Part shown: positions 6,740 to 63,800 of the stretch, in pieces
Layout of the letters: the number at the start of each line of letters is the position of its first letter
Numbering within the stretch: position 1 is the stretch's first letter
Assembly: GCF_006345805.1 (NCBI RefSeq)
Contig: NC_042997.1
Location: forward strand, 155,992,001-156,056,000
Origin: Octopus sinensis
Lineage: Eukaryota
Length of the DNA: 64,000 bases
Direction of reading: 5' to 3'
Position numbers and translations under genes: made by a program
The notes under the pieces: generated by a model
Told to the model about the DNA's origin: nothing
The model's database searches: none
What the model saw: only the letters and a program-made list of their open reading frames with translations

Positions 6740-7883
6740 CATGCCTCTTTGCCTTGACATTGGTTGATAGTTGTAAACAAATGTAACCATCATTTAAGCA
6801 ATGTCCTTTGTTTGCAATCCTCCATGAAAAGATGTTTGCTTATATAGAAATTTAATCTTACTTGAAAACATGAGAGAGTAGGCAACAGGAAGAGCAACTG
6901 GCCATAGAAAATTTGCCTCAACAAATCAAAGATAGAAGGGAATTGAAAAAGAAGCGGTGTGGCTATACATGTAATTAATGTAGAATTATAAGTTGGCATT
7001 CTTCATTGAGCAAAATTAGAGAAGCAATGAAATATTAATTTTCAGAAAATATGCTTGGCAAGCATTTAAATGTTACTTGAAAATGTTTCGATGTGTAAAT
7101 GTCCCAGATTCCAATTAAAAGCAAGACTAGATATCACAGACAAGTAAAAAAAAAAACATTTTGTACATGACCACCTTTATTATTTTCTAGAAAACTGACA
7201 AGTAGAATGCAGAGCAAGGAAAAGCAAAGCAATGTTTTCACAGGGTTACCATTATTATGCAAATGGAGGAGAGATACCAAGACTGGAATGATAGTATAAT
7301 GGTTGATTATGTTCTGTGTTTGAAATGAGATGAGCCTCATATAAAACATGTGCCAAGATCAAACAACAAATATCTATAAAGAATATTTTTTATATATATA
7401 TTTTTAATATTAAATCTCATATATATACATACTTTTGTAGTTAACATTTATTTGAAAAAAATCTCATATCATGAAAAAAGAAGTACAGATACATTCAGAA
7501 AGATCATATCATACAAATATAATTATATATGTATATAATTTTATATGTATATATATACATACACGTAGACATACGTATATATCAAGTTTCAAAATACAGA
7601 CCAATATTATTAAACAGATTCTAAAAATTTTCTCTTTCACAGTTGTCATTTTATATATTTTTCTTGCATGGCCATTCACATTTAATCTGGTTGAAATCTC
7701 TCACAATTCCAAAATCTCATGAGAATGTTTGGATATAAAAAATGTATATATATATATACACACACACACATATACATACATATATACATACATACATATA
7801 CATACATGTATACAAACATACATACAAACATATATATATATATATACATACAAACATATATACATATATATACATATGCCCAT

Positions 7884-7975
7884 GGGCATATGGTGTAGTG
7901 GTTACGATGCGGTCTACTAACCCCAAGATTCTGAGTTTGATTCCAGGCAGTGACCTGAATAATAATAATAATAAC
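7884..7975 (+). mobile_element. tRNA-like SINE head followed by (AAT)n
   Basis: GGGCATATGGTGTAGTGGTTACG...GAGTTTGATTCC A/B-box-like; no complete cloverleaf. Confidence 0.6.
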
Positions 7976-9967
7976 AGACCATATTTTTTTTGTTTCTTTG
8001 ATCCAGTGGTTCCTCAAAAGACGATTGCCCACCCCTGTGAACAACCAGGCAGAAAAGGATAGGGGAGACAAGGAAGCAGCAACTAGAACCCCTTCTGTGC
8101 CAGTGGTCCTACAAATGAATGGAGCCCTCACCTCATTGGACAACCAGAGGAAAAGAGTTCCCACCACAAGAAAAGGAAGGACGGAACACAAACAAAGAAG
8201 GAAAGAAAGAAAAAGGAAAAGGCAAAATGAAACAACCAAAACTGAAACTCCAACTGACCAAACAAAAAACCCCATGGAGGATCCAATGCCATCAAAAACC
8301 CTACAGGAAAGAAGAAATTTGGAAGGCACTCAAGAACCTGCAAGGCAAATGTTGGCATGGGGAAGATGGCAAAAACTGCCGGTTTTCCCACCTGACACCC
8401 CACCAAAACTACTGGGGCCTTAAGGAGAAAAACTTCCCCGAGGAAAGACAACAAATGTCTCCAAGGAAAAAAATTTACAAAAGAAGTGCGCTCTTCAGAT
8501 GTTATGCGTAATGCAGCAGCTGACCCGACAACACCAAGCACAAACAAGGAACCTTGCCCACCACTGCGCAAGACCACCACAGTCAACAGACATGGGATGG
8601 CCTCCCCTAATACCTGCACAATCGTCACCCCAATACTTTTACTTAATATTGGGGGCCTGATGCATCATAATAAAAGCAAAATTTCTTTCCTGAGAGATCT
8701 TGCTGCATGCAATCAAGCCCTATGCATAGCACTTGTGGAAACTCACCCTGATATAGAGGGTGCAGAAGTACACGTACCAAAATATGCCATACTGTGAACA
8801 GACAGAAGGAAAAGGAACCATGGTAGAGCTGCTGTATATATCCGTAATGACCTCACACCCTAAGTATTACTGTCATACTCAAATTCAGTATGTGATACTC
8901 TAATTGTATACATAAGACAACATAATATAGTCATATGCAATACATATTGCCCACTGGATGCTCCAAACCACATAGGCAAGTCTGAAGACTGCCTCACAAG
9001 AATTAAAGAAATCCTCATGAAACTGGAACACCATGTGATCATATTTCTTATGGGTGATTTCAACTTCCCCAACATCAAATGGCCCAAAGGTCTCATACTC
9101 TCAGGAACGACTCATTGCAAACAAGCACAGGTGGAGTTCCTGCTCAACCTCACCAATGCCCTATTGATAGAGCAAGCTGTACTTAGACCATCTAGGGTGA
9201 ATAACATTCTGGATCTCTGCTTCATGAACAATATGGACATCATTCATGATGTGAAAGTGACGCTGACATTAGTCTCGGATCACAACATAATAGAGCTGTC
9301 TATGTTTGGGCCGAAAGTAACCAGAGATATACAGCCTAAAGGAAGCACCAGAAATCTCTCCAATCTGAACTTCCACAAAGCAAACTGGAAATCGATCCAA
9401 AAAGAGATCCTCAGAGAGGACTAGCTGAAATATCTCCCCACAACAGACATTGACATGAAACTAGAATGCTTCATGTCTGTTGTGCAAGCCATGTGCCAGA
9501 AATATGTCCCAGAACACAAGGCCAAAACAAATAGGAGCAAGATTCCAAGGGAGAGGAATGTCCTCGTGAGATGACGGATGAAGGTTGCAAATTGACCCAA
9601 CCAACATTCCAAAAGTAGTGAAAGGTCCCACCTAAAAACACTGATGGAGATTGAAAAAAGGCTGCAACAATCCTATGTGAGGGAGAAAGTAGACAAAGAA
9701 GCCTGGGTTATAAAAAACATTAAAGCAAACCCAAAGGCCTTCTTTCATTTCGCGAAAGAAACAGCCTCAGTATGCTGCAAGATAGGACCCCTCTTCCAAA
9801 AGGATAGTTTCTTCACAGATAGTCCAACTAGGATCAACGAGGTACTGAATGATCAGTTCAAAAGTGTCTTTACCACCCCGTTGGAACACAGACAAGTGAA
9901 CGAACCAGTAGACTTCTTTGCCGCCTCACCTTTAACCAGCAAGGCAGTTACAATGGAATACATCGAC

Positions 9968-37741: not shown

Positions 37742-38509
37742 CAACATGGATGTATGGATAAAATTATCACTGAAAAGAGCAAGTACATTGCACTGGAAAA
37801 CGTGATGGCAAAGGAGACAGGTTGTTGTTTAGGCCACATATTCCTATTCTAGAAGATCTAGCACGATGCAGTCATGACCATCACACCTTTTTCTTTCATA
37901 CACACTATAACCGATTAAATTATCAAGTCCTTTCTTTTTAAAACGATGGGATTTGAGGGAGGAAGTGCTACTATTTCTAGGAGGTTAAGTGACCACATGT
38001 AGTTTCACTAGTTGGCTGGAGACGTCGTAAATGGTGGTTATTTAGGCTCAGTCCGTCCATGATCCGGTAAGTCTATGAACAAAACCATTCAAGACTTGAC
38101 AGTCCACATTTTGTCATAGTGTTCCTCGGACTACATCAACCAACGGCGAGATGTGATTTAGCTGCTTTTTTCAGCAGGTAGATGGACAGTGCAGAGGTTT
38201 GTTTGTTGGCACAAGAAGTTTGAGCCTGGATAAGAACCGAGAGACAAAACAGGATTTCCAAGTTGCTGTTAAGGAGGCCCATCAGGCATTTCAAAACACA
38301 TGGCTTAAAAACAACAAAAAGAACAGTGTGTATGTATGAAGGCAACATTTGTGTGTAGGTATATATGTGTATTGTATGAAGATACTCGCGTATGCACACG
38401 CGAATATTTATGGATAGATAGACAGATAGTGCTTTTTTTTCTGACATATGAAAAAGCTGATTTTATATATACATTGCATGAAGAATACATTTATGTATGT
38501 ATATGTGTG

Positions 38510-38564
<55 letters not shown>

Positions 38565-38650
38565 TGTGTGTGTGTGTGTGTATAAAGAAAACGTGTCTAT
38601 GCATATCTACCGATATATTTTTATGAAGAATATGTGCGCGCGTGTATGTG

Positions 38651-38707
<57 letters not shown>

Positions 38708-39103
38708 TGTTTATTACTCGACGTTTCCACTTCTGAAAATATATTTATTATATGTGTATACACGCAAACATGCAAGTTGAGATATCGGTGTCTAGATCAA
38801 ATGATTGATGCAGACAAAAACAAACCACTGAACAAATAAGCATCATAAAAGATATATATAAAACACCAAGATATATATATATACATATATATATATCCAC
38901 ACACGTGCAATGCACATTCGGAAAAACAAGAAACCTTGTATTTATGGCTTCAATGTTTTCTTTCATAAGCGTTGTATTGTTTTGTTTCCTCATTTTTCGT
39001 CTTTTCACATAGCAAACTATTCAAACATGTTTGTTTTTTTCAAAAGGAAGTGCATTTCTAATTATTAATTATTATTATTGTCTATGTATTAATAAATACA
39101 TAC

Positions 39104-56364: not shown

Positions 56365-57140
56365 TGTTATAATAATGATAGTGAAATTATTGTGTATTGT
56401 GCTTAGGTGCACTACAACTCATCAAAGGAGTGTCTATAGTATAGAGAATTATGTGCAAAAGTCAGGAAAATGAACAGTGTATGAATCATGATATACATGT
56501 GTGCATGCATATGGAGGGTATATATCAGATGTAGTGTTGGCAAATTTCAGGAAGCATGGTGGTTTTAAAGGATGTAATGTCTCAGCAGCTAACAACTGAT
56601 GCAGGTAATTTGTTCCATGCTTCAGCAACTCTGAGAGTGAAAAAATGTTTCCAAAAGTCATGAGAGCTGTGCTGTTTTCAGACTTTGTAGGCATGCCTAT
56701 GTGTGTTAGACACATAGAGTTCAAAAAAGTGCTCAAGGTGGTTGTTGGCTTGAGGGTTAATAATTTTGTGGGTGTTTACCAAGTCAGTTGCCAGACGTTG
56801 GAGCTTCAATATATCTATGCCCAGAGATATGCCTGGTGGAGGCAATTCACTAGGCTGCATGTCTCTGAACAGTTTCCAGGAGGTCAATGTCCTGAGCAAG
56901 TTAGGGGTTCTAGACTAAAGATGCAAATTCCAAGTGTGGCTACACCATAGCCATATATAGCCTTAAATAGATAGCTGGAGAGCGGCTGACAAACATCTTG
57001 CTGAGTGATGCCAAGACACCCTCAGCCTTCTTGACAATTTTAGCGATGTGCTTTGCTCAGCACAAATCGCTGTTGACAGTAATGCCCAGATCACATTCAC
57101 AAGAAGACTTCTTGATAAACAAGTATGTCATTTTTCTACA
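56365..57140 (-). mobile_element. CR1-type LINE 3' end
   Basis: Frameshifted C-terminus ...LKLQRLATDLVNTHKII...FFELYVSNTHRHAYKV..., then FFTLRVAEAWNKLPASVVSC; short 3' UTR. Confidence 0.8.
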
Positions 57141-57189
57141 TAAGCTCCTTCTTCTTTGATGCACTTGCTACTGCAGTCCACAAGCTTGC

Positions 57190-57620
57190 ATATTTGAGTC
57201 TCAAAAGAAGGGTTAGCATCACCTTTCCCATGGAAGACTGAGTTTTGAATTTCTTTGTTGCTGGCAAGCCAGGATGTTTCCACTCCATATTCTGTCTTTT
57301 AGATTCTGCCTCATAATGACAGACCCATGTTTCATCTCCTGTGACTATTCTGCTCAAAACCTCTTTGCCCTCATTATTGTAGTGATTGAGTAAATGTTGG
57401 CAGAGCTCAAGACGTTTACGCTTGTTCTCTGCAGTAAGCTCTCTTGGCACCCATCTTGCACAGACTTTATGGAAGCCGAGCTCATCATGGATGATTTGAT
57501 AGGCAGAACCATGACTAATCAGCAGAAAATGAGCTACGTCATTGATGATAGCCAGTTCACTATTACCATCTTTTGAGCTTGCTGAATCTTCTTGTCAGTG
57601 GTGGAGGTTGACAGGAATCC
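57190..57620 (-). mobile_element. Tc1/mariner transposase remnant
   Basis: IIHDELGFHKVCARWVPRELT...RIVTGDETWVCHYEAESKRQNMEW (WVPHEL-like motif and first catalytic D). Confidence 0.9.
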
Positions 57621-57931: not shown

Positions 57932-58120
57932 ATGAAAGTTCCTGGTTTTGAGTAAAAGAAAATACAGGAGGATCAGCCAACATATTCCCCTCTCAGATTC
58001 ATGCACTTATTGCAGCAGTCCTTCAATTTTTCTAATCCCTGTATAAGAACTTGAAAGGTTGGACCTCCATCCAAGCCTTTCATGATACCCTTAAAGTCAG
58101 GAATTTTCAGCATCCCCTCG
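57932..58120. mobile_element. mariner-type MITE
   Basis: Right end reads TACGAGGGGATGCTGAAAATTCCTG on the minus strand next to TA; left end has the partial TIR TGAAAGTTCCTGG. Confidence 0.65.
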
Positions 58121-58194
58121 TACATATACATACATACATACATACATACATACATACATACATACATACAAACATACATACATACATACATACA

Positions 58195-58227
<33 letters not shown>

Positions 58228-58365
58228 GTATATATGTATATATATGTACATATATATGTATATATAATATACATATATATATGTTCATATATATATGTGT
58301 ATATATATGTACACATATATACATACATGCATGGGTGCACACACACATGCACACACACTCACACA

Positions 58366-58415
<50 letters not shown>
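58121..58415. repeat. Compound (TACA)n/(TA)n/(CA)n microsatellite
   Basis: Seen directly. Similar tracts at 6070-6257, 6640-6740, 7740-7876, 24580-24670, 38490-38702 and 51500-51605. Confidence 0.95.
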
Positions 58416-58417
<2 letters not shown>

Positions 58418-59111
58418 TGTTGTTTGCTTGACACGAACATACCGATAATCCACCAAAATTTATTGTAAAATAAGGACATTCATTTTCATTTATAAAATAA
58501 CAACGATCTAAAATTTAATTTCTACATTTTACATTGAAATTCAATAATGGTTTCAAAACCTTTCTCTGATTAAAAATATTGGTTCTGGTAGAGAGAACAG
58601 AGAGACTCCCTGATTTTGTTAGATAACTTTCCTGATTTATTAATGGTCAATGTAAAGGTAGTTATTAATGGAAATTGCCTGTGGCTCATATTGAATCCAG
58701 TCACTCTAAAATATTCCTGGAAATAAAACCATGCACCTCTTTATCACTTCCTATATTGATTCTTGCTTCAACAGAGTTTGGCTGTAGGTATTTTTACTAC
58801 ATTCTTATACAATTCTGAAAACCATTTTTGATGTGAGGATTTCAAGTTCCTCAGTTCCGCATAACAAAGGCACCACATTTTACTTTATGTCAATAAATTG
58901 GTATTCCAGATAGACGTTGTTTATTCACTAATTCTATCAGAATTTCAAATAAGATTTGGGTCATCGTATCATCATATAAATGACTAAATTAACATTCCAA
59001 ATTGACTTCCTACAATTAATTAATGAATTACATTATCATAGATTCAATTTCAGACATTGGATTATTTCTTCAATACATTGGTGAAATTAATTTTTTTTTT
59101 TCCCTTTTCAG

Positions 59112-59147
59112 TAAGAAACATCAACAATAATTCCTGGTTATCTAAAT
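59112..59147 (+). other. Candidate 36-nt plus-strand exon of an unidentified transcript
   Basis: Strong acceptor ttttttttttcccttttcag and donor |GTAAGT; one open frame (xRNINNNSWLSK), symmetric phase 1-1. No homology recognised. Confidence 0.3.
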
Positions 59148-59267
59148 GTAAGTCATATGTATTCTTTTCTTTATTACATTTCTTTCAAAATGATCCATGG
59201 GAGAGCCTCAACTTGACCTGTAAGAAATACCAGTGAAGTCTCCCTCAAAACCACTGTATCATCTTAA

Positions 59268-59709
59268 CTCATTTGTTACCATATTTCTTTATTGCTTTAT
59301 TGCCCACAAGGGGCTAAACATAGAGAGGATAAATAAGGACAGACAAAGGGAAAAAGTCAATTACATCGACCCCAGTGCATAACTGGTACTTAATTTATTG
59401 ACCTCGAAAGGATGAAAGGCAAAGTCGACCTCGGCAGAATTTGAACTCAGAACGTAACAGCAGACGAAATATTGCTAAGCATTTCGCCCCGCGTGCTAAC
59501 GTTTCTGCCAGTTTGCTGCCTTGTTACCATATTTCTGTTAAGATGAACTGTCTTTGTTTCAATAAATTTTGAAAATTACGAAGAACTTAATAAAATAACA
59601 TTGTTATTAATAAGCTGTGTTTGGAATATAAATTAATATAGATCACTTTATAGCAGAAGGTTTGTATCCTAAACCAAGGGTAATTTTAGGCTTGTTGATA
59701 TTAAAACAG
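59268..59709. mobile_element. Older piggyBac-type MITE interrupted by a SINE
   Basis: TTAA at 59264 and 59710; body homologous to 4615-4812 once 59289-59536 is removed. Confidence 0.65.
59289..59520 (-). mobile_element. tRNA-derived SINE family D with 16-bp TSD
   Basis: TSD TTGTTACCATATTTCT at 59273 and 59521; head GGCAGCAAACTGGCAGAAACGTTAGC...GAGTTCAAATTC; conserved GTCGACTTTGCCTTTCATCC. Confidence 0.9.
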
Positions 59710-59877
59710 TTAAGTAAACATTTGAAAGTATAGCCCTAAATGCCTCTAAAAAAGAGGGGATAGTCATGCCTGGAATGCTTTTGATCACGTGACTGCATGA
59801 TCAGGATTCACCTGAGGCTGGACAAAATGACAACTGCCAATATTCATATTTTAAAATATAGACAGTAAATTATCAAA

Positions 59878-60095
59878 ATCATCGTCATCGTCATCATCAT
59901 CACCACCACCACCACCACCACCACCACCACCACCACCACTGCTGCCACCACCGCTGCTGCTGCCACTGCTGCTGCCACTGCTGCTGCCACTGCTGCTGCC
60001 ACTGCTGCTGCTGCCACTGCTGCTGCCACTGCTGCTGCTGCCACCGCCACCACCACCACCACCACCACCACCATCACCACCGCCACCATCATCAT
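59878..60095. repeat. Compound trinucleotide microsatellite (CAT/CAC/TGC)
   Basis: Contiguous with the CAT tail of the family-B element at 60085. Confidence 0.95.
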
Positions 60096-60414
60096 TTAAT
60101 GTCCATTTTCTATGCTGGCATGGGCTGGATGGTTTGACAAAAGCTGGCAAGCTTGATGACTGTGCCAAGTGCTATTGTTTGTTTTGGCATGGTTTCTATA
60201 GCTGGATGCTCTTCTTATAGCTAATCATTGCAATATTGGATAAAGTACTTTGCAGTAGTAAATTGCAGCACTTAATATTCTGAGTTCAAATTCTGCCATG
60301 GTCAACTTTATTTTTCATCTTTCTGTAGCTGATAAAATAAAGTACCAGTCAAGTACTCCAATGAATTTAATTGATTATACATTCCCACAAAATGTGTGGC
60401 TCTCTACCAATGTT

Positions 60415-60800
60415 AGAAATCATGGCTATGTGATTAAGAAGTTTGCTTTCCAACCACATGGTTTTGGGTTCATTCTCACTGCGTGGTACCATGGGCAAGT
60501 GTCTCCTACTATAGCCTTGGATTTGACAGATGGAAACTGAAAGAAGCCCATTATATATGTGTGTTTGTGTGTGTATGTGTCTACTTGTCTTGACATCACA
60601 TGATAGTTGTAAGCAAGTGTCACCATCATGCTTGTGGTGTCGTTTATTTCCAGGAAAACATTTCTTGCCGAGAGGAAACATCTTACTTGGAAACAGATGA
60701 GGGCTGGCATCTGACCATTGAAAGTCTACTGCAACAAATTCAATCTGATCTATGCAAGCATGGAAAAGTGGACATTAAAACAATGATGGTGATGAAGACA
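60415..60800 (+). mobile_element. SINE with family-A head and RTE-type (ATG)n tail
   Basis: Family-A head; 3' end GCATGGAAAAGTGGACATTAAAACAATGATG. Related pieces at ~6740-6960, 11720-11940 and 55320-55670. Confidence 0.7.
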
Positions 60801-60909
60801 GCATATATAGGAAAGATAACAATATTAGCTAGGACATGTAATGTAAGTGAATGATTTATTCATGACATAAATGTATACTTCAAGTATATGGCTGACAAGA
60901 AATGAATTG

Positions 60910-60910
60910 T

Positions 60911-60951
<41 letters not shown>

Positions 60952-60976
60952 TACTACTACTACTACTACTACTACT
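60910..60976. repeat. (TAC)n microsatellite
   Basis: Seen directly; absent at the matching position of the other inverted-repeat arm. Confidence 0.95.
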
Positions 60977-61460
60977 TTATGTTGATATCAAATCTTTACC
61001 CAAGGCTGCCAAAGGAAACGCATACCTTGACTAATAAAGCAAATCTCTGAGATATATTAATAATATAAGCTAATGTTTGAGAATGATCCATTTTCAAAGC
61101 AAATGTGAAATTGTCTTGCCATTAAAGGTATTAAGCAATTCTTACAATAAATAATTACATTAGCTAGGACATCCAATGTAAATGGATACTGCATTCCTGA
61201 TGTAAACAGGGAAAAATTACAGTGGATTGTTGATGAAAAGTTTTCAAGGTGGAAACAAATAAAGGAAATCCTTGGCTGAAGTAGATAGAGTAGACTTCGG
61301 AATGTTGGGCCTTACAGAGGATGTAATTTAAGATCAAGATGCATGGAAAGATTATATAACATAGGCTTATTCAATCTTGTATTGAAGGTGGGTTTTCTTG
61401 ATACATGTGGTGAACTATTCTGGGTGTTGGTGAATCATCTGTATATTTTGCTTTGTGTGC

Positions 61461-62160
61461 ACTGGTATGGTCATGTACTACAGATGGATGAGGAGAGATG
61501 CCTTAAGAAGTGCCACTCCTAAACAGTTGAAGGAATCCGGGGTAGACATAGACCAGGAAGACATGGGATGAGGTAGTCAAGCATGACCTTTGAACTTTGG
61601 GCCTCACAGAAGCAATGACGAAAGACCAAGATCTCTGGAGATATGCTGTGACTGCAAAGACCCAACAAATAACGTGAGTTCATGGCTGTTTCCTGCACTA
61701 GTTTCACATAGCAGCCCCAGCCCATCCAAAGTACTTTGGATTGCAGAATGGCCTGCTGTGTTTACCTTGGATTGTAGGGCAACCTGCTGTGCTTGAGGAG
61801 ACCTATTAAGTCAAGTACATCAACATCAAAATAAAAATCACATGGAAATTGTAGTTGTGATACCTGTGCCAGTGGCACATAAAAATCACCATCCAAATGT
61901 GTCCGATGCCAGTGCTGCCTTGACTGGCTTCTGTGCCAGTGGCACATAAAAAGCACCAACCGATCGTGGTCGCTGCCAGCCTCCCCTGGCACCTGTGCTG
62001 GTGGCACATAAAACCACCCACTACACTCATGGAGTGGTTGGCGTTAGGAAGGGCATCCAGCTGTAGAAAAACTGCCAGATCAGACTGGAATCTGGTGAAC
62101 TGGTTGAACTGTCCAACCCATGCTAGCATGGAAAACGGATGTTAAACGATGATGATGATG
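61461..62160 (+). mobile_element. 5'-truncated RTE LINE 3' end (same family as 12420-13832)
   Basis: WYGHVLQMDEERCLKKCH... RT C-terminal motif; same 3' UTR; tail GTTAAACGATGATGATG. Confidence 0.9.
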
Positions 62161-63587
62161 TTTAGTCAGAGTATGAAGGGCAATGCTGATGAATTTTTCA
62201 GTGGATTTTTTTCGTTAACCATCGTAATTTAATGACTGCTTTCCATGCCGGCCATGGGTTTGATGGTTCAACAGGAGCTGGTAAGATTTAACATTGCCAT
62301 CTGGTCCATGGAGCCTTTAACAGTGTCCATTAAGTTGCATGTGTTTCAGTCAACACTGGTTTGAAAATAACATGCTCACCCTTTTTCCAGAACTCCTAAA
62401 AATAGTCATCAGTACTACCTTTCATCCTCTGACTAAGCCATAAAAACAAAATATACAGATGATTCAACAACACCCAGAATAGTTCACCACATGTATCAAG
62501 AAAACCCACCTTCAATACAAGATTGAATAAGCCTATGTTATATAATCTTTCCATGCATCTTGATCTTAAATTACATCCTCTGTAAGGCCCAACATTCCGA
62601 AGTCTACTCTATCTACTACGTCCAAGGATTTCCTTTATTTGTTTCCACCTTGAAAACTTTTCATCAACAATCCACTGTAATTTTTCCCTGTTTACATCAG
62701 GAATGCAGTATCCATTTACATTGGATGTCCTAGCTAATGTAATTATTTATTGTAAGAATTGCTTAATACCTTTAATGGCAAGACAATTTCACATTTGCTT
62801 TGAAAATGGATCATTCTCAAACATTAGCTTATATTATTAATATAACTCAGAGCTTTGTCTTATTAGTTGAGGTATGGATCTATTTTGGCAAACCTGGCGA
62901 AAGATTTGATATAAACACGAATAATAACTCATTTGCCATCAGCCACACTCCTAAATTATACATTTATATCATAAATGAATCATTCACTTACATTACATGT
63001 CCTAGCTAATATTGTTGTTTATCCTGTATACATTGTCCAATACCATCGATGCCTTGACATTTTTGCAACTCACTTTACTTTCACTTTTCCTTTTAAATCA
63101 ATATTGCATGAACCAATGAGAGGGCAGTTACTAAAACTGCTAGAAACAGCAGTTGAATCTTCCTTAAGTCACATCGTACTGTTTTGAATAAAGAAAGTAG
63201 TCCTCAATATACACAAAGATGGAATGGTCATAGCTATAATGGCTTTAATCAAAGGTCTACTCAATCAAGGGTGATCTCCAATGAACAACAATAACAGCAT
63301 CAACATTACTCATCTTCTGGATCATTATTCTTCAACCTCTGTAGATCCAATGAATTCAGAGGCCATTTCTCACTGCCTTATAATATTCTTCCACATGCTT
63401 CATAGATTTAGGAGATAATAGAATATATCTCTTCCTACTAAACTATCTGAGCTGACCATAGCCTTCAGTTAGTGGCTGATCATATGATTAGCTTCTGTAG
63501 TGCACCTAGAACTTTGATGTCTTTGAAATGAATTATATTGCCTGATTGGAGTGCTTCTACCAGCACTGCTTCAGTAGCATTCTCAAG

Positions 63588-63644
<57 letters not shown>

Positions 63645-63702
63645 GTTATTATTATTATCATCATCATTATTATTATCATCATCATTATTATTATTATTAT
63701 TA

Positions 63703-63784
<82 letters not shown>

Positions 63785-63800
63785 CAGTAGCAGCAGCAGC
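63588..63800. repeat. (ATT)n/(CAT)n/(AGT)n/(AGC)n compound microsatellite
   Basis: Seen directly. Confidence 0.95.

What the first reader, a model, noticed from the sequence alone, without database searches (positions are those of the whole stretch)
60795..63035. Old inverted duplication with a sharply bounded 398-bp near-identical core
Seen: 61053-61450 and 62447-62844 are reverse complements with 4 mismatches (3 clustered). Just outside, homology continues for ~190-260 bp at roughly 80%, and the left arm has gained a (TAC)n tract. The ~1 kb spacer begins with an RTE insertion ~10 bp from the inner edge. Inference: the step in identity suggests recent gene conversion or recurrent flipping of the spacer between older repeats. 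If transcribed it would form ~400 bp of near-perfect dsRNA, a strong ADAR or endo-siRNA substrate in a lineage known for extensive A-to-I editing. An assembly or polishing artefact is a real alternative.
Basis: partly seen in the sequence, partly recalled or inferred. Interest (0 to 1): 0.7.

Follow-up and report, generated by a model that had tools for sequence, protein, structure and literature searches.

The report
Gene-converted patch in old inverted repeat
Two old, decayed, oppositely oriented copies of junk DNA have had about 400 bp made nearly identical again by one copy overwriting the other, up to the point where a mobile element split one copy; this is an ordinary by-product of DNA repair.

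Summary
61053-61450 and 62447-62844 are reverse complements with 4 mismatches, three of them clustered. Outside this core the arms are 75-82% alike, and a (TAC)n tract occurs in the left arm only.

The anatomy needs one correction. The roughly 1 kb "spacer" is mostly a discrete 706-bp high-copy retroposon (61455-62160) that interrupts the left arm. After it, the arm resumes (62162-198, pairing with 62436-398) at about 86% identity. The true spacer is therefore about 199 bp. The inner edge of the core is the retroposon insertion site, not the end of homology.

Both arms are unique in the 2.72-Gb genome. They consist of decayed relics of non-LTR retrotransposon ORF2 C-termini.

Relative ages, as pairwise JC distance:
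- Duplication: at least 0.2-0.3.
- Retroposon insertion: about 0.14.
- Last homogenisation: about 0.01.

The best explanation is non-allelic (arm-to-arm) gene conversion of a few hundred bp, limited on one side by the 706-bp heterology. This process is well known.

An independent double insertion of a young repeat is refuted. An assembly or polishing artefact is unlikely, but I could not test it without reads. Transcription, ADAR editing and siRNA production are also untested. As an siRNA source the locus would have no trans target.

Interest is low.

The parts
60423..60795 (+). Flanking SINE-like retroposon. Its 3' tail (..ATGATGGTGATGA) ends one base before the left arm, so it sets the visible outer limit of that arm.
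   Evidence: 60423-60573 and 60744-60795 match many other copies in the window. No homology to the right flank 63038+ is found beyond it. ARAGORN finds no tRNA gene. The SINE label rests on reading the sequence by eye.
60797..60915 (+). Left arm, outermost diverged segment. It pairs with 63037-62922 and holds a second relic of the W-LGHVM-type ORF2 C-terminal motif.
   Evidence: 21/116 mismatches, 82% identity, JC K = 0.21. 60816-60871 is 75% like 61151-61206. Translation.
60916..60975 (+). (TAC)n microsatellite, present in the left arm only (a 60-bp heterology).
   Evidence: The right arm has TTATTATTC at the corresponding place.
60976..61052 (+). Left arm, diverged segment just outside the core. 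It pairs with 62921-62845.
   Evidence: 19/77 mismatches, 75% identity, JC K = 0.30.
61053..61454 (+). Left copy of the homogenised core (the conversion tract). It includes a decayed relic of a non-LTR ORF2 C-terminus at 61155-61361.
   Evidence: 4/398 mismatches, or 5/402 up to 61454, K = 0.010-0.013. The maximum-likelihood block is exactly 61053-61450. Only two copies exist in the genome. Relic: 5 stops in 69 codons, 35-42% amino-acid identity to more than 10,000 first-look genomic candidates (81 matches at E<=0.01 among the 150 scored), two of which were checked and sit at the C-terminus of 625-668 aa RVT_1 ORFs.
61455..62160 (+). It is inserted into the left arm. It has discrete 5' and 3' ends, a (TGA)n tail and internal repeats of about 67 bp.
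   Evidence: 6175 first-look candidates at 90-93% identity. Eleven genomic copies all begin at 61454-61463, and homology never extends past 62160; eight of the eleven reach 62159/62160. In-window copies also end at 62157-62160. The window copy differs at 6.9% of sites from the majority of its relatives. ORF2 C-terminal motif WYGHV...LGLTE...DQDLWR.
62162..62198 (+). Left arm resumed after the retroposon. It pairs with 62436-62398.
   Evidence: 32/37 ungapped columns match, plus a 2-bp and a 6-bp indel; K = 0.15. It starts 2 bp after the retroposon tail and 7 bp inside the right core. A score this high occurred in 1 of 500 shuffles when allowed anywhere in the spacer.
62199..62397 (.). True spacer of the inverted repeat (about 199 bp). 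62215-62285 is a tail fragment of about 65-70 bp from a retroposon, in minus orientation.
   Evidence: No arm-to-arm pairing here. 62215-62285 matches 362 first-look candidates at 84-89%, and only over that stretch.
62398..62442 (-). Right arm, inner diverged segment. This is the empty site for the retroposon.
   Evidence: Right arm (reverse complement)..TTTTG T TTT TATGGC TTAGTCAG... Left arm..TTTTG C TTT [706 bp] T TTAGTCAG...
62443..62844 (-). Right copy of the homogenised core.
62845..63037 (-). Right arm, outer diverged segment (75-82% identity to the left arm). The relic's paralogy to the core continues to 63063.
   Evidence: 62963-63063 is 71% like 62691-62789.

Best explanation
An old inverted segmental duplication of non-coding, transposon-derived DNA had arms of at least about 640 bp around a spacer of about 199 bp. 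The arms then drifted apart to 75-85% identity.

The left arm later acquired a (TAC)n expansion and a 706-bp retroposon. Much more recently, one arm was used as the repair template for the other. This is non-allelic, intrachromosomal gene conversion, either as one event or as the latest of a series. It overwrote about 400 bp.

The tract ran up to the retroposon, within about 25 aligned bases. There the large heterology prevented further heteroduplex or synthesis. On the other side it ended at an arbitrary point, 61052/61053.

Shown here: the anatomy, the uniqueness of the arms, the step in identity, and the order of events. Inferred: the mechanism, the role of the heterology as a barrier, and the absence of function. 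The locus most likely does nothing for the animal. If it lies in a transcript, it would fold into a near-perfect duplex of about 400 bp, like many other inverted repeat pairs.
For: 1. The step is highly significant and the maximum-likelihood block is 61053-61450 (2dlnL = 72.9; Fisher p = 3e-17).
2. Collinear homology continues on both sides of the core at 75-86% identity: outward and inward beyond the retroposon. The core is therefore a patch inside an older repeat, not a separate insertion.
3. The core and the outer arm each occur only at this locus in the 2.72-Gb assembly. The same search method finds 65-bp repeats at 84-86% identity and 245-bp repeats at 81%.
4. The retroposon has discrete ends shared by 11 other copies and is 6.9% from the majority of its relatives. 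That is about 0.14 in arm-to-arm units, against 0.010-0.013 for the core and 0.15-0.30 for the flanks. Homogenisation therefore came long after the insertion, and its inner limit coincides with it.
5. A tract of about 400 bp fits published estimates for non-allelic gene conversion: a mean of 250 bp with CI 63-1000, and a rate that falls as copies diverge (10.1101/135152). Arm-to-arm conversion in inverted repeats is well documented (PMC3723533, PMC1803023).
6. The arms carry decayed ORF2 relics with 5 stops in 69 codons, have no Rfam match, and hold no ORF of 90 aa or more. Nothing suggests selection on the sequence.
Against: - Conversion between arms only about 78% identical should be strongly suppressed. 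A single late event would need rare homeologous recombination. The alternative is a long-running conversion domain that shrank to the core, which the data allow but do not prove. The inner flank (K = 0.15) matches 2 x 0.07 from the retroposon, but it rests on only 37 bp.
- The inner boundary is resolved only to within about 25 aligned bases, so the barrier role of the heterology is a positional coincidence, not a demonstration.
- The 77 bp between the (TAC)n tract and the core are diverged without any heterology at the outer edge.
- No outgroup, second haplotype or reads are available. The classical test of concerted evolution (paralogues closer than orthologues) was not possible.
Confidence: 0.8

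Rival explanations
1. Replicative template switching across the inverted repeat (quasi-palindrome 'correction'). A stalled nascent strand switched to the complementary arm, or folded back on itself, and copied about 400 nt before switching back. This made the imperfect palindrome locally perfect without a double-strand-break repair event.
For: It predicts the same footprint: a patch of near-perfect complementarity inside an older, imperfect inverted repeat. It needs only microhomology at the switch points, so it avoids the problem of homeologous recombination at about 78% identity. Before the retroposon arrived the spacer was only about 199 bp, which favours intrastrand pairing.
Against: Homogenisation came after the retroposon insertion, when the paired cores were already 988 bp apart. 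Described template-switch corrections are, to my knowledge, mostly tens of bases, not 400. The coincidence of the inner edge with the heterology is not specifically predicted. The sequence alone cannot separate this mechanism from gene conversion.
Confidence: 0.1
2. Assembly or polishing artefact. The arms are really about 80% identical throughout, and the consensus was homogenised over 400 bp.
For: No reads could be examined. The genome size (2.72 Gb) fits a published long-read plus short-read-polished octopus assembly, a kind of assembly in which repeat polishing errors do occur.
Against: - Reads from arms that are 75-80% identical would not cross-map, so polishing has no route to homogenise them.
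- The whole 2.2-kb structure is shorter than a typical long read.
- False inverted duplications from chimeric reads give perfect palindromes with little or no spacer. They do not give a 99% patch with a 3-base mismatch cluster, flanked on both sides by collinear diverged homology and bounded by a retroposon present in one arm only.
- No haplotig copy exists that could have been mixed in.
Confidence: 0.05
3. Selection keeps the stem. The core is a functional hairpin (an hpRNA or endo-siRNA precursor, an ADAR substrate, or a cis-element duplicated in inverted orientation), and purifying or compensatory selection has held both arms constant while the flanks decayed.
For: On either strand the RNA would form 397-398 core-core pairs, with a duplex energy of about -685 kcal/mol. 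It is the only near-identical repeat in the window. Hyper-editing of repeat-derived dsRNA is widespread in metazoans (PMC5625713).
Against: - The core is a decayed retrotransposon relic with no Rfam match.
- It has no other copy in the genome, so siRNAs would have no trans target.
- Selection does not explain why the block ends at the retroposon insertion.
- 99% identity over 400 bp next to 75% identity would require ultraconservation of both copies.
- No evidence of transcription is available.
Confidence: 0.04
4. Two independent insertions, in opposite orientation, of the same young repeat into older homologous sequence.
For: The arms are ultimately retrotransposon-derived.
Against: Only the two arms match the core in 2.72 Gb. 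The nearest relatives of the relic are 35-42% identical at the protein level. Homology is collinear through core and flanks. The left arm lacks the 3' end that any retroposed copy must carry.
Confidence: 0.01

Closest known systems
Arm-to-arm gene conversion in palindromes and inverted repeats (human Y and X palindromes; near-perfect inverted repeats in C. elegans): PMC3723533, PMC8981503, PMC1803023
   Same: The arms are inverted and separated by a unique spacer. Arm-to-arm identity is far higher than the age of the duplication allows, because one arm is copied onto the other.
   Different: Those palindromes span kilobases to megabases, usually contain genes, and are kept above 99% identical along the whole arm. 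Here the arms are about 640 bp of junk DNA, only about 400 bp is homogenised, and the rest has escaped. No GC enrichment is seen (core 32.4% GC against 32.0% in the flank).
Non-allelic gene conversion tracts between diverging duplicates, and escape from conversion (10.1101/135152; PMC3924837)
   Same: The patch is a few hundred bp of near-identity within older paralogous sequence. The rate is expected to fall as copies diverge. Indels or insertions mark the limits of conversion domains.
   Different: Those studies concern mostly direct or dispersed gene duplicates, with outgroups to polarise events. Here there is a single unpolarised locus in inverted orientation.
Hairpin-RNA (hpRNA) endo-siRNA loci of Drosophila, and hyper-edited inverted repeat pairs (PMC5625713)
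   Same: A near-perfect inverted repeat of several hundred bp with a loop. It would be a Dicer or ADAR substrate if transcribed.
   Different: hpRNA arms derive from, and target, a protein-coding gene elsewhere. This core has no other copy in the genome. Transcription and small RNAs were not tested.
Foldback or long-TIR DNA transposons and MITEs
   Same: Long terminal inverted repeats around a short middle.
   Different: It is single-copy and has no target-site duplication: the flanks are GGTGATGAAG and TCCAATACCA. The arms are relics of non-LTR ORF2.

Membership tests
Inverted repeat under arm-to-arm gene conversion (concerted evolution) | Two arms in inverted orientation with collinear homology around a spacer | tested here: met
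   60797-61454 plus 62162-62198 against 63037-62398, with a spacer at 62199-62397.
Inverted repeat under arm-to-arm gene conversion (concerted evolution) | Part of the arms is much more alike than the age of the duplication allows, judged against an independent clock | tested here: met
   Core K = 0.010-0.013 against flanks of 0.15-0.30. The retroposon that interrupts one arm is 0.07 from its family majority.
Inverted repeat under arm-to-arm gene conversion (concerted evolution) | Paralogous arms within a species are closer than orthologous arms between species | not testable with these tools
   No related animal genome is available: G000 has no relatives in the collection.
Inverted repeat under arm-to-arm gene conversion (concerted evolution) | Paralogous sequence variants move between arms among individuals | not testable with these tools
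   There is only one haploid consensus, and no haplotig of the locus.
hpRNA / endo-siRNA locus | The RNA folds into a long near-perfect hairpin | tested here: met
   397-398 core-core pairs in the MFE fold of either strand.
hpRNA / endo-siRNA locus | The arms are homologous to a target gene elsewhere | tested here: not met
   The core has only its two own copies in 2.72 Gb at E<=0.001.
hpRNA / endo-siRNA locus | Transcription and 21-22-nt small RNAs from the stem | not testable with these tools
   No RNA data.
Foldback / long-TIR transposon or MITE | Multiple copies in the genome | tested here: not met
   Searches find only this locus.
Foldback / long-TIR transposon or MITE | Target-site duplication flanking the terminal repeats | tested here: not met
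   The flanks 60787-60796 and 63038-63047 are unrelated. The left flank is the tail of another retroposon.
Non-LTR retroposon insertion (element 61455-62160) | Discrete ends shared by many dispersed copies, a 3' simple-repeat tail, and an empty site available for comparison | tested here: met
   for the ends and copy number. The tail TGATGATGATG is at 62150-62160. The right arm serves as the empty site. No clear target-site duplication: at most TTT, with 6-7 bp missing at the site.
Non-LTR retroposon insertion (element 61455-62160) | Assignment to the RTE clade specifically | not tested
   Only the generic ORF2 C-terminal motif was seen. Pfam RVT_1 was found on two long ORFs that carry the motif and match the arm relic at about 38% amino-acid identity; their relation to this element's family was not tested. 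No clade phylogeny was done.
False inverted duplication or polishing artefact | Raw reads disagree with the consensus | not testable with these tools
   No reads. The pattern (a 99% patch, diverged collinear flanks, an insertion in one arm) does not fit the usual artefacts.

The most novel reading that the evidence does not exclude
The 400-bp stem has not been homogenised by accident. Instead it is kept near-perfect by repeated conversion because the hairpin transcript is used, for example as a long dsRNA that engages ADAR or Dicer in a cephalopod. That would make it a conserved, structurally maintained hairpin-RNA gene built from dead transposon sequence.
Probability: 0.03. Interest if true: 0.6.

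Novelty: already known. Interest (0 to 1): 0.15.

Why it matters
It matters little in itself. It is a clean, datable small example of non-allelic gene conversion in an invertebrate genome. A tract of about 400 bp stops at a retroposon that breaks the homology, with an internal clock of three tiers: flanks, retroposon, core.

If such loci were collected genome-wide, they could give tract lengths and rates of ectopic conversion in cephalopods, and a catalogue of potential long-dsRNA sources for the editing machinery. As a single locus in transposon-rich non-coding DNA, with no evidence of transcription, it is ordinary.

Tried and rejected
- **High-copy young repeat inserted twice.** Rejected. 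The core and the outer arm are unique in the genome.
- **Foldback or MITE element.** Rejected. It is single-copy with no target-site duplication.
- **Homology continuing beyond the left-flank SINE or further out on the right.** None found in 58000-60800 or elsewhere in the window.
- **Larger symmetry involving the trinucleotide arrays at 59870-60083 and 63589-63800.** Only low-complexity matches at 72-91% identity, and not collinear with the arms. Rejected as coincidence of microsatellites.
- **Known RNA family.** The only hit was SNORD127-like at E = 0.68, far below gathering. Rejected.
- **tRNA-like head of the flanking SINE.** ARAGORN finds nothing.
- **Host gene context.** No ORF of 90 aa or more looks like a host exon. 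The ORFs that look like proteins are transposon-derived: Exo_endo_phos_2 at 8864-9424, and a mariner-like ORF at 57136-57594 with no Pfam hit. Whether the locus is intronic stays unknown.
- **Right arm plus true spacer as one old retroposed copy ending in the tail fragment 62215-62285.** Relatives match only those 65-70 bp, so this stays undecided.
- **RNA-mediated origin with editing footprints.** The five core differences are C/A, T/C, A/T, G/T and C/T, not an A/G pattern.
- **Failed search.** One literature search timed out.
Full report
**1. The observation**

The inverted repeat is real and sits at the stated coordinates.
- An ungapped block, 60976-61454, pairs with 62921-62443. Inside it, 61053-61450 differs from the reverse complement of 62447-62844 at four positions: 61276, 61277, 61279 and 61430. 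A fifth difference lies at 61451, and the last three bases (61452-61454) pair again.
- Outward, 60976-61052 has 19 mismatches in 77 columns (75% identity).
- After a 60-bp (TAC)n tract present only in the left arm (60916-60975), 60797-60915 has 21 mismatches in 116 columns (82%).
- A two-change-point likelihood over all 632 aligned columns places the low-divergence block at exactly 61053-61450. It has 4/398 mismatches inside and 46/234 outside (2dlnL = 72.9; Fisher p = 3e-17).
- No other repeat pair of 100 bp or more in the 64-kb window, direct or inverted, reaches 95% identity. The transposon copies there are at most about 90% alike.

**2. The corrected anatomy**

The roughly 1-kb "spacer" is not a spacer.
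- Positions 61455-62160 are one discrete 706-bp retroposon. A search of the window's own genome (2.72 Gb, 13,516 contigs; the window is C1:155,992,001-156,056,000) gave 6175 first-look candidates at 90-93% identity.
- In eleven copies fetched with their flanks, homology to the window begins at 61454-61463 and never extends past 62160; eight of the eleven reach 62159/62160. Copies within the window end at 62157-62160.
- The element starts with the C-terminal motif of a non-LTR ORF2 (WYGHV...LGLTE...DQDLWR, now with stops and a frameshift). It ends in TGATGATGATG.
- Directly after this tail the left arm resumes. 62162-62198 pairs with 62436-62398 (32 of 37 ungapped columns, plus a 2-bp gap). This begins two bases after the retroposon and seven bases inside the right core. 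A local score that high occurred in 1 of 500 shuffles when allowed anywhere in the spacer. At this predicted position it is far less likely by chance.
- The right arm is therefore the empty site. Right arm (reverse complement): TTTTG-T-TTT-TATGGC-TTAGTCAG. Left arm: TTTTG-C-TTT-[706 bp]-T-TTAGTCAG.
- The true arms are 60797-61454 plus 62162-62198 against 63037-62398.
- The true spacer is about 199 bp (62199-62397). It contains a retroposon tail fragment of 65-70 bp in minus orientation (62215-62285).

The outer edge of the near-identical core is sharp, with a support interval of 61045-61062. The inner edge (support 61424-62177) coincides with the retroposon insertion to within about 25 aligned bases.

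**3. What the arms are**

The arms occur nowhere else. The core finds only its two own copies, and the outer 256 bp finds only itself and its partner, even at E<=10. The same search method recovers 65-bp repeats at 84-86% identity and 245-bp repeats at 81%.

The arms are ancient transposon debris.
- 61155-61361 translates, through five stops in 69 codons, into a relic of the same ORF2 C-terminal region.
- That peptide is 35-42% identical to more than 10,000 first-look candidate sites in the genome (81 matches at E<=0.01 among the 150 scored). Two of these matches were checked and sit at the C-terminus of ORFs of 625 and 668 aa that carry Pfam RVT_1.
- The outermost segment of each arm holds a second, more decayed relic of the same motif. 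This explains the internal direct repeat in each arm: 62691-62789 is 71% like 62963-63063, and 61151-61206 is 75% like 60816-60871.
- The left arm lacks the 3' end that any retroposed copy must have, and the two arms share the same two-relic layout. The repeat therefore arose as a segmental inverted duplication, not by two insertions.
- On the left, the visible arm ends one base after the tail of a SINE-like element (60423-60795). No homology to the right flank is found beyond it. The original outer limit is unknown.

There is no Rfam match, no ORF of 90 aa or more in the arms, and no evident host exon in the window.

**4. Order of events**

| Segment or event | Pairwise JC distance | Source |
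|---|---|---|
| Outer flank, 60797-60915 | 0.21 | |
| Outer flank, 60976-61052 | 0.30 | |
| Inner 37 bp beyond the retroposon | 0.15 | |
| Retroposon insertion (0.07 x 2) | about 0.14 | |
| Core | 0.010-0.013 | |

The window's retroposon differs at 6.9% of sites from the majority of its nearest relatives. This is a lower bound, because the relatives were chosen for similarity. It corresponds to about 0.14 on the two-lineage scale.

The order is therefore duplication first, then retroposon insertion, then homogenisation of the core much later. Substitutions in the flanks are 34 transitions to 16 transversions, an ordinary pattern of decay.

**5. Mechanism**

The pattern is a patch of a few hundred bases of near-identity inside older, collinear, diverged paralogy. 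It is younger than an insertion that breaks the homology and it ends at that insertion. This is the footprint of non-allelic gene conversion between the arms.

The tract length fits published estimates. The mean is 250 bp (CI 63-1000), described as "a few hundred base pairs" across organisms, with a rate that declines as copies diverge (10.1101/135152). Arm-to-arm conversion in inverted repeats is well documented, for human sex-chromosome palindromes (PMC3723533, PMC8981503) and for near-perfect inverted repeats in C. elegans (PMC1803023).

Two versions remain open.
- A single late event between arms that were already about 78% identical. Such homeologous events are rare.
- A conversion domain that was once wider and shrank to the present core as its edges escaped. 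In this version the inner flank would have been cut off by the retroposon. Its distance (0.15) agrees with twice the retroposon's age (0.14), but 37 bp cannot discriminate.

A replicative template switch across the repeat would leave the same footprint and cannot be separated from conversion by sequence alone.

The three clustered mismatches (CTGA against ACGT at 61276-61279) are most simply one later multi-base mutation, or an unconverted patch. This is inference only.

**6. Rivals**

- **Artefact.** I could not test this without reads. However, arms at 75-80% identity would not cross-map during polishing. The 2.2-kb structure is shorter than a typical long read. Known false inverted duplications are perfect palindromes with little or no spacer. 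There is also no haplotig of the locus.
- **Selection on a functional hairpin.** This is not excluded, but it does not explain the coincidence with the insertion and has nothing in its favour beyond the fold. The MFE structure has 397-398 core-core pairs on either strand, and the duplex energy is about -685 kcal/mol.
- **Trans-acting siRNA source.** The locus would have no target, because the sequence is unique.
- **Hyper-editing.** Editing of repeat-derived dsRNA is common across animals (PMC5625713). Even if the locus is transcribed, it would be one of many such substrates.

**7. Verdict**

The spacer anatomy is revised: the element lies in the arm and bounds the tract. The ideas about dsRNA, ADAR and spacer flipping remain untested.

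This is an ordinary instance of a known process in non-coding, transposon-rich DNA. Interest is low.

Noticed in passing
window 61155-61361, 62536-62742, 60800-60905, 62930-63063: Each arm is built from two decayed relics of a non-LTR retrotransposon ORF2 C-terminus (W-LGH..M..LGLTE..DQD.W motif). This explains the internal direct repeat of period 272-335 bp within each arm.
   Followed up: yes
window 61864-62013: The inserted retroposon carries two to three tandem units of about 67 bp (CTGTGCCAGTGGCACATAAAA...). Genomic copies differ in this stretch, which suggests a variable number of units within the family.
   Followed up: partly
window 59870-60083 and 63589-63800: Two long compound trinucleotide arrays: (CAT/CAC/CTG)n on the left and (TTA)n(TCA)n(GTA)n(GCA)n on the right. 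At least the left one abuts the tail of a minus-strand retroposon (60084-60217), as if the tails seeded microsatellite expansion. The (TAC)n in the left arm is complementary to the (GTA)n at 63749-63792, but not collinear with the arms.
   Followed up: partly
window 62215-62285: A fragment of about 65-70 bp matches the conserved 3' tail domain of several hundred retroposon copies (362 first-look candidates) in minus orientation. It lies tail-to-tail with the 706-bp element across 55 bp. It is either a severely 5'-truncated insertion or the original tail of the old element that forms the right arm.
   Followed up: partly
window 57136-57594 (-) and 8864-9424 (+): Other transposon ORFs. A 152-aa ORF looks by eye like a mariner-type transposase fragment (TGDETW...) but has no Pfam hit at E<=0.001. 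A 186-aa ORF matches Exo_endo_phos_2, the endonuclease of a non-LTR element.
   Followed up: partly
window 60423-60795: A SINE-like element with a box-B-like stretch (GGTTTTGGGTTCATTCTCAC) and a retroposon-type tail ends one base before the left arm. ARAGORN does not call a tRNA there.
   Followed up: partly
window 7700-8100, 38300-38800, 58000-58450: Long (TATG/TGTG/TATA)-type simple repeats produce many of the spurious long ORFs rich in Y, I, C and H in the six-frame listing.
   Followed up: no
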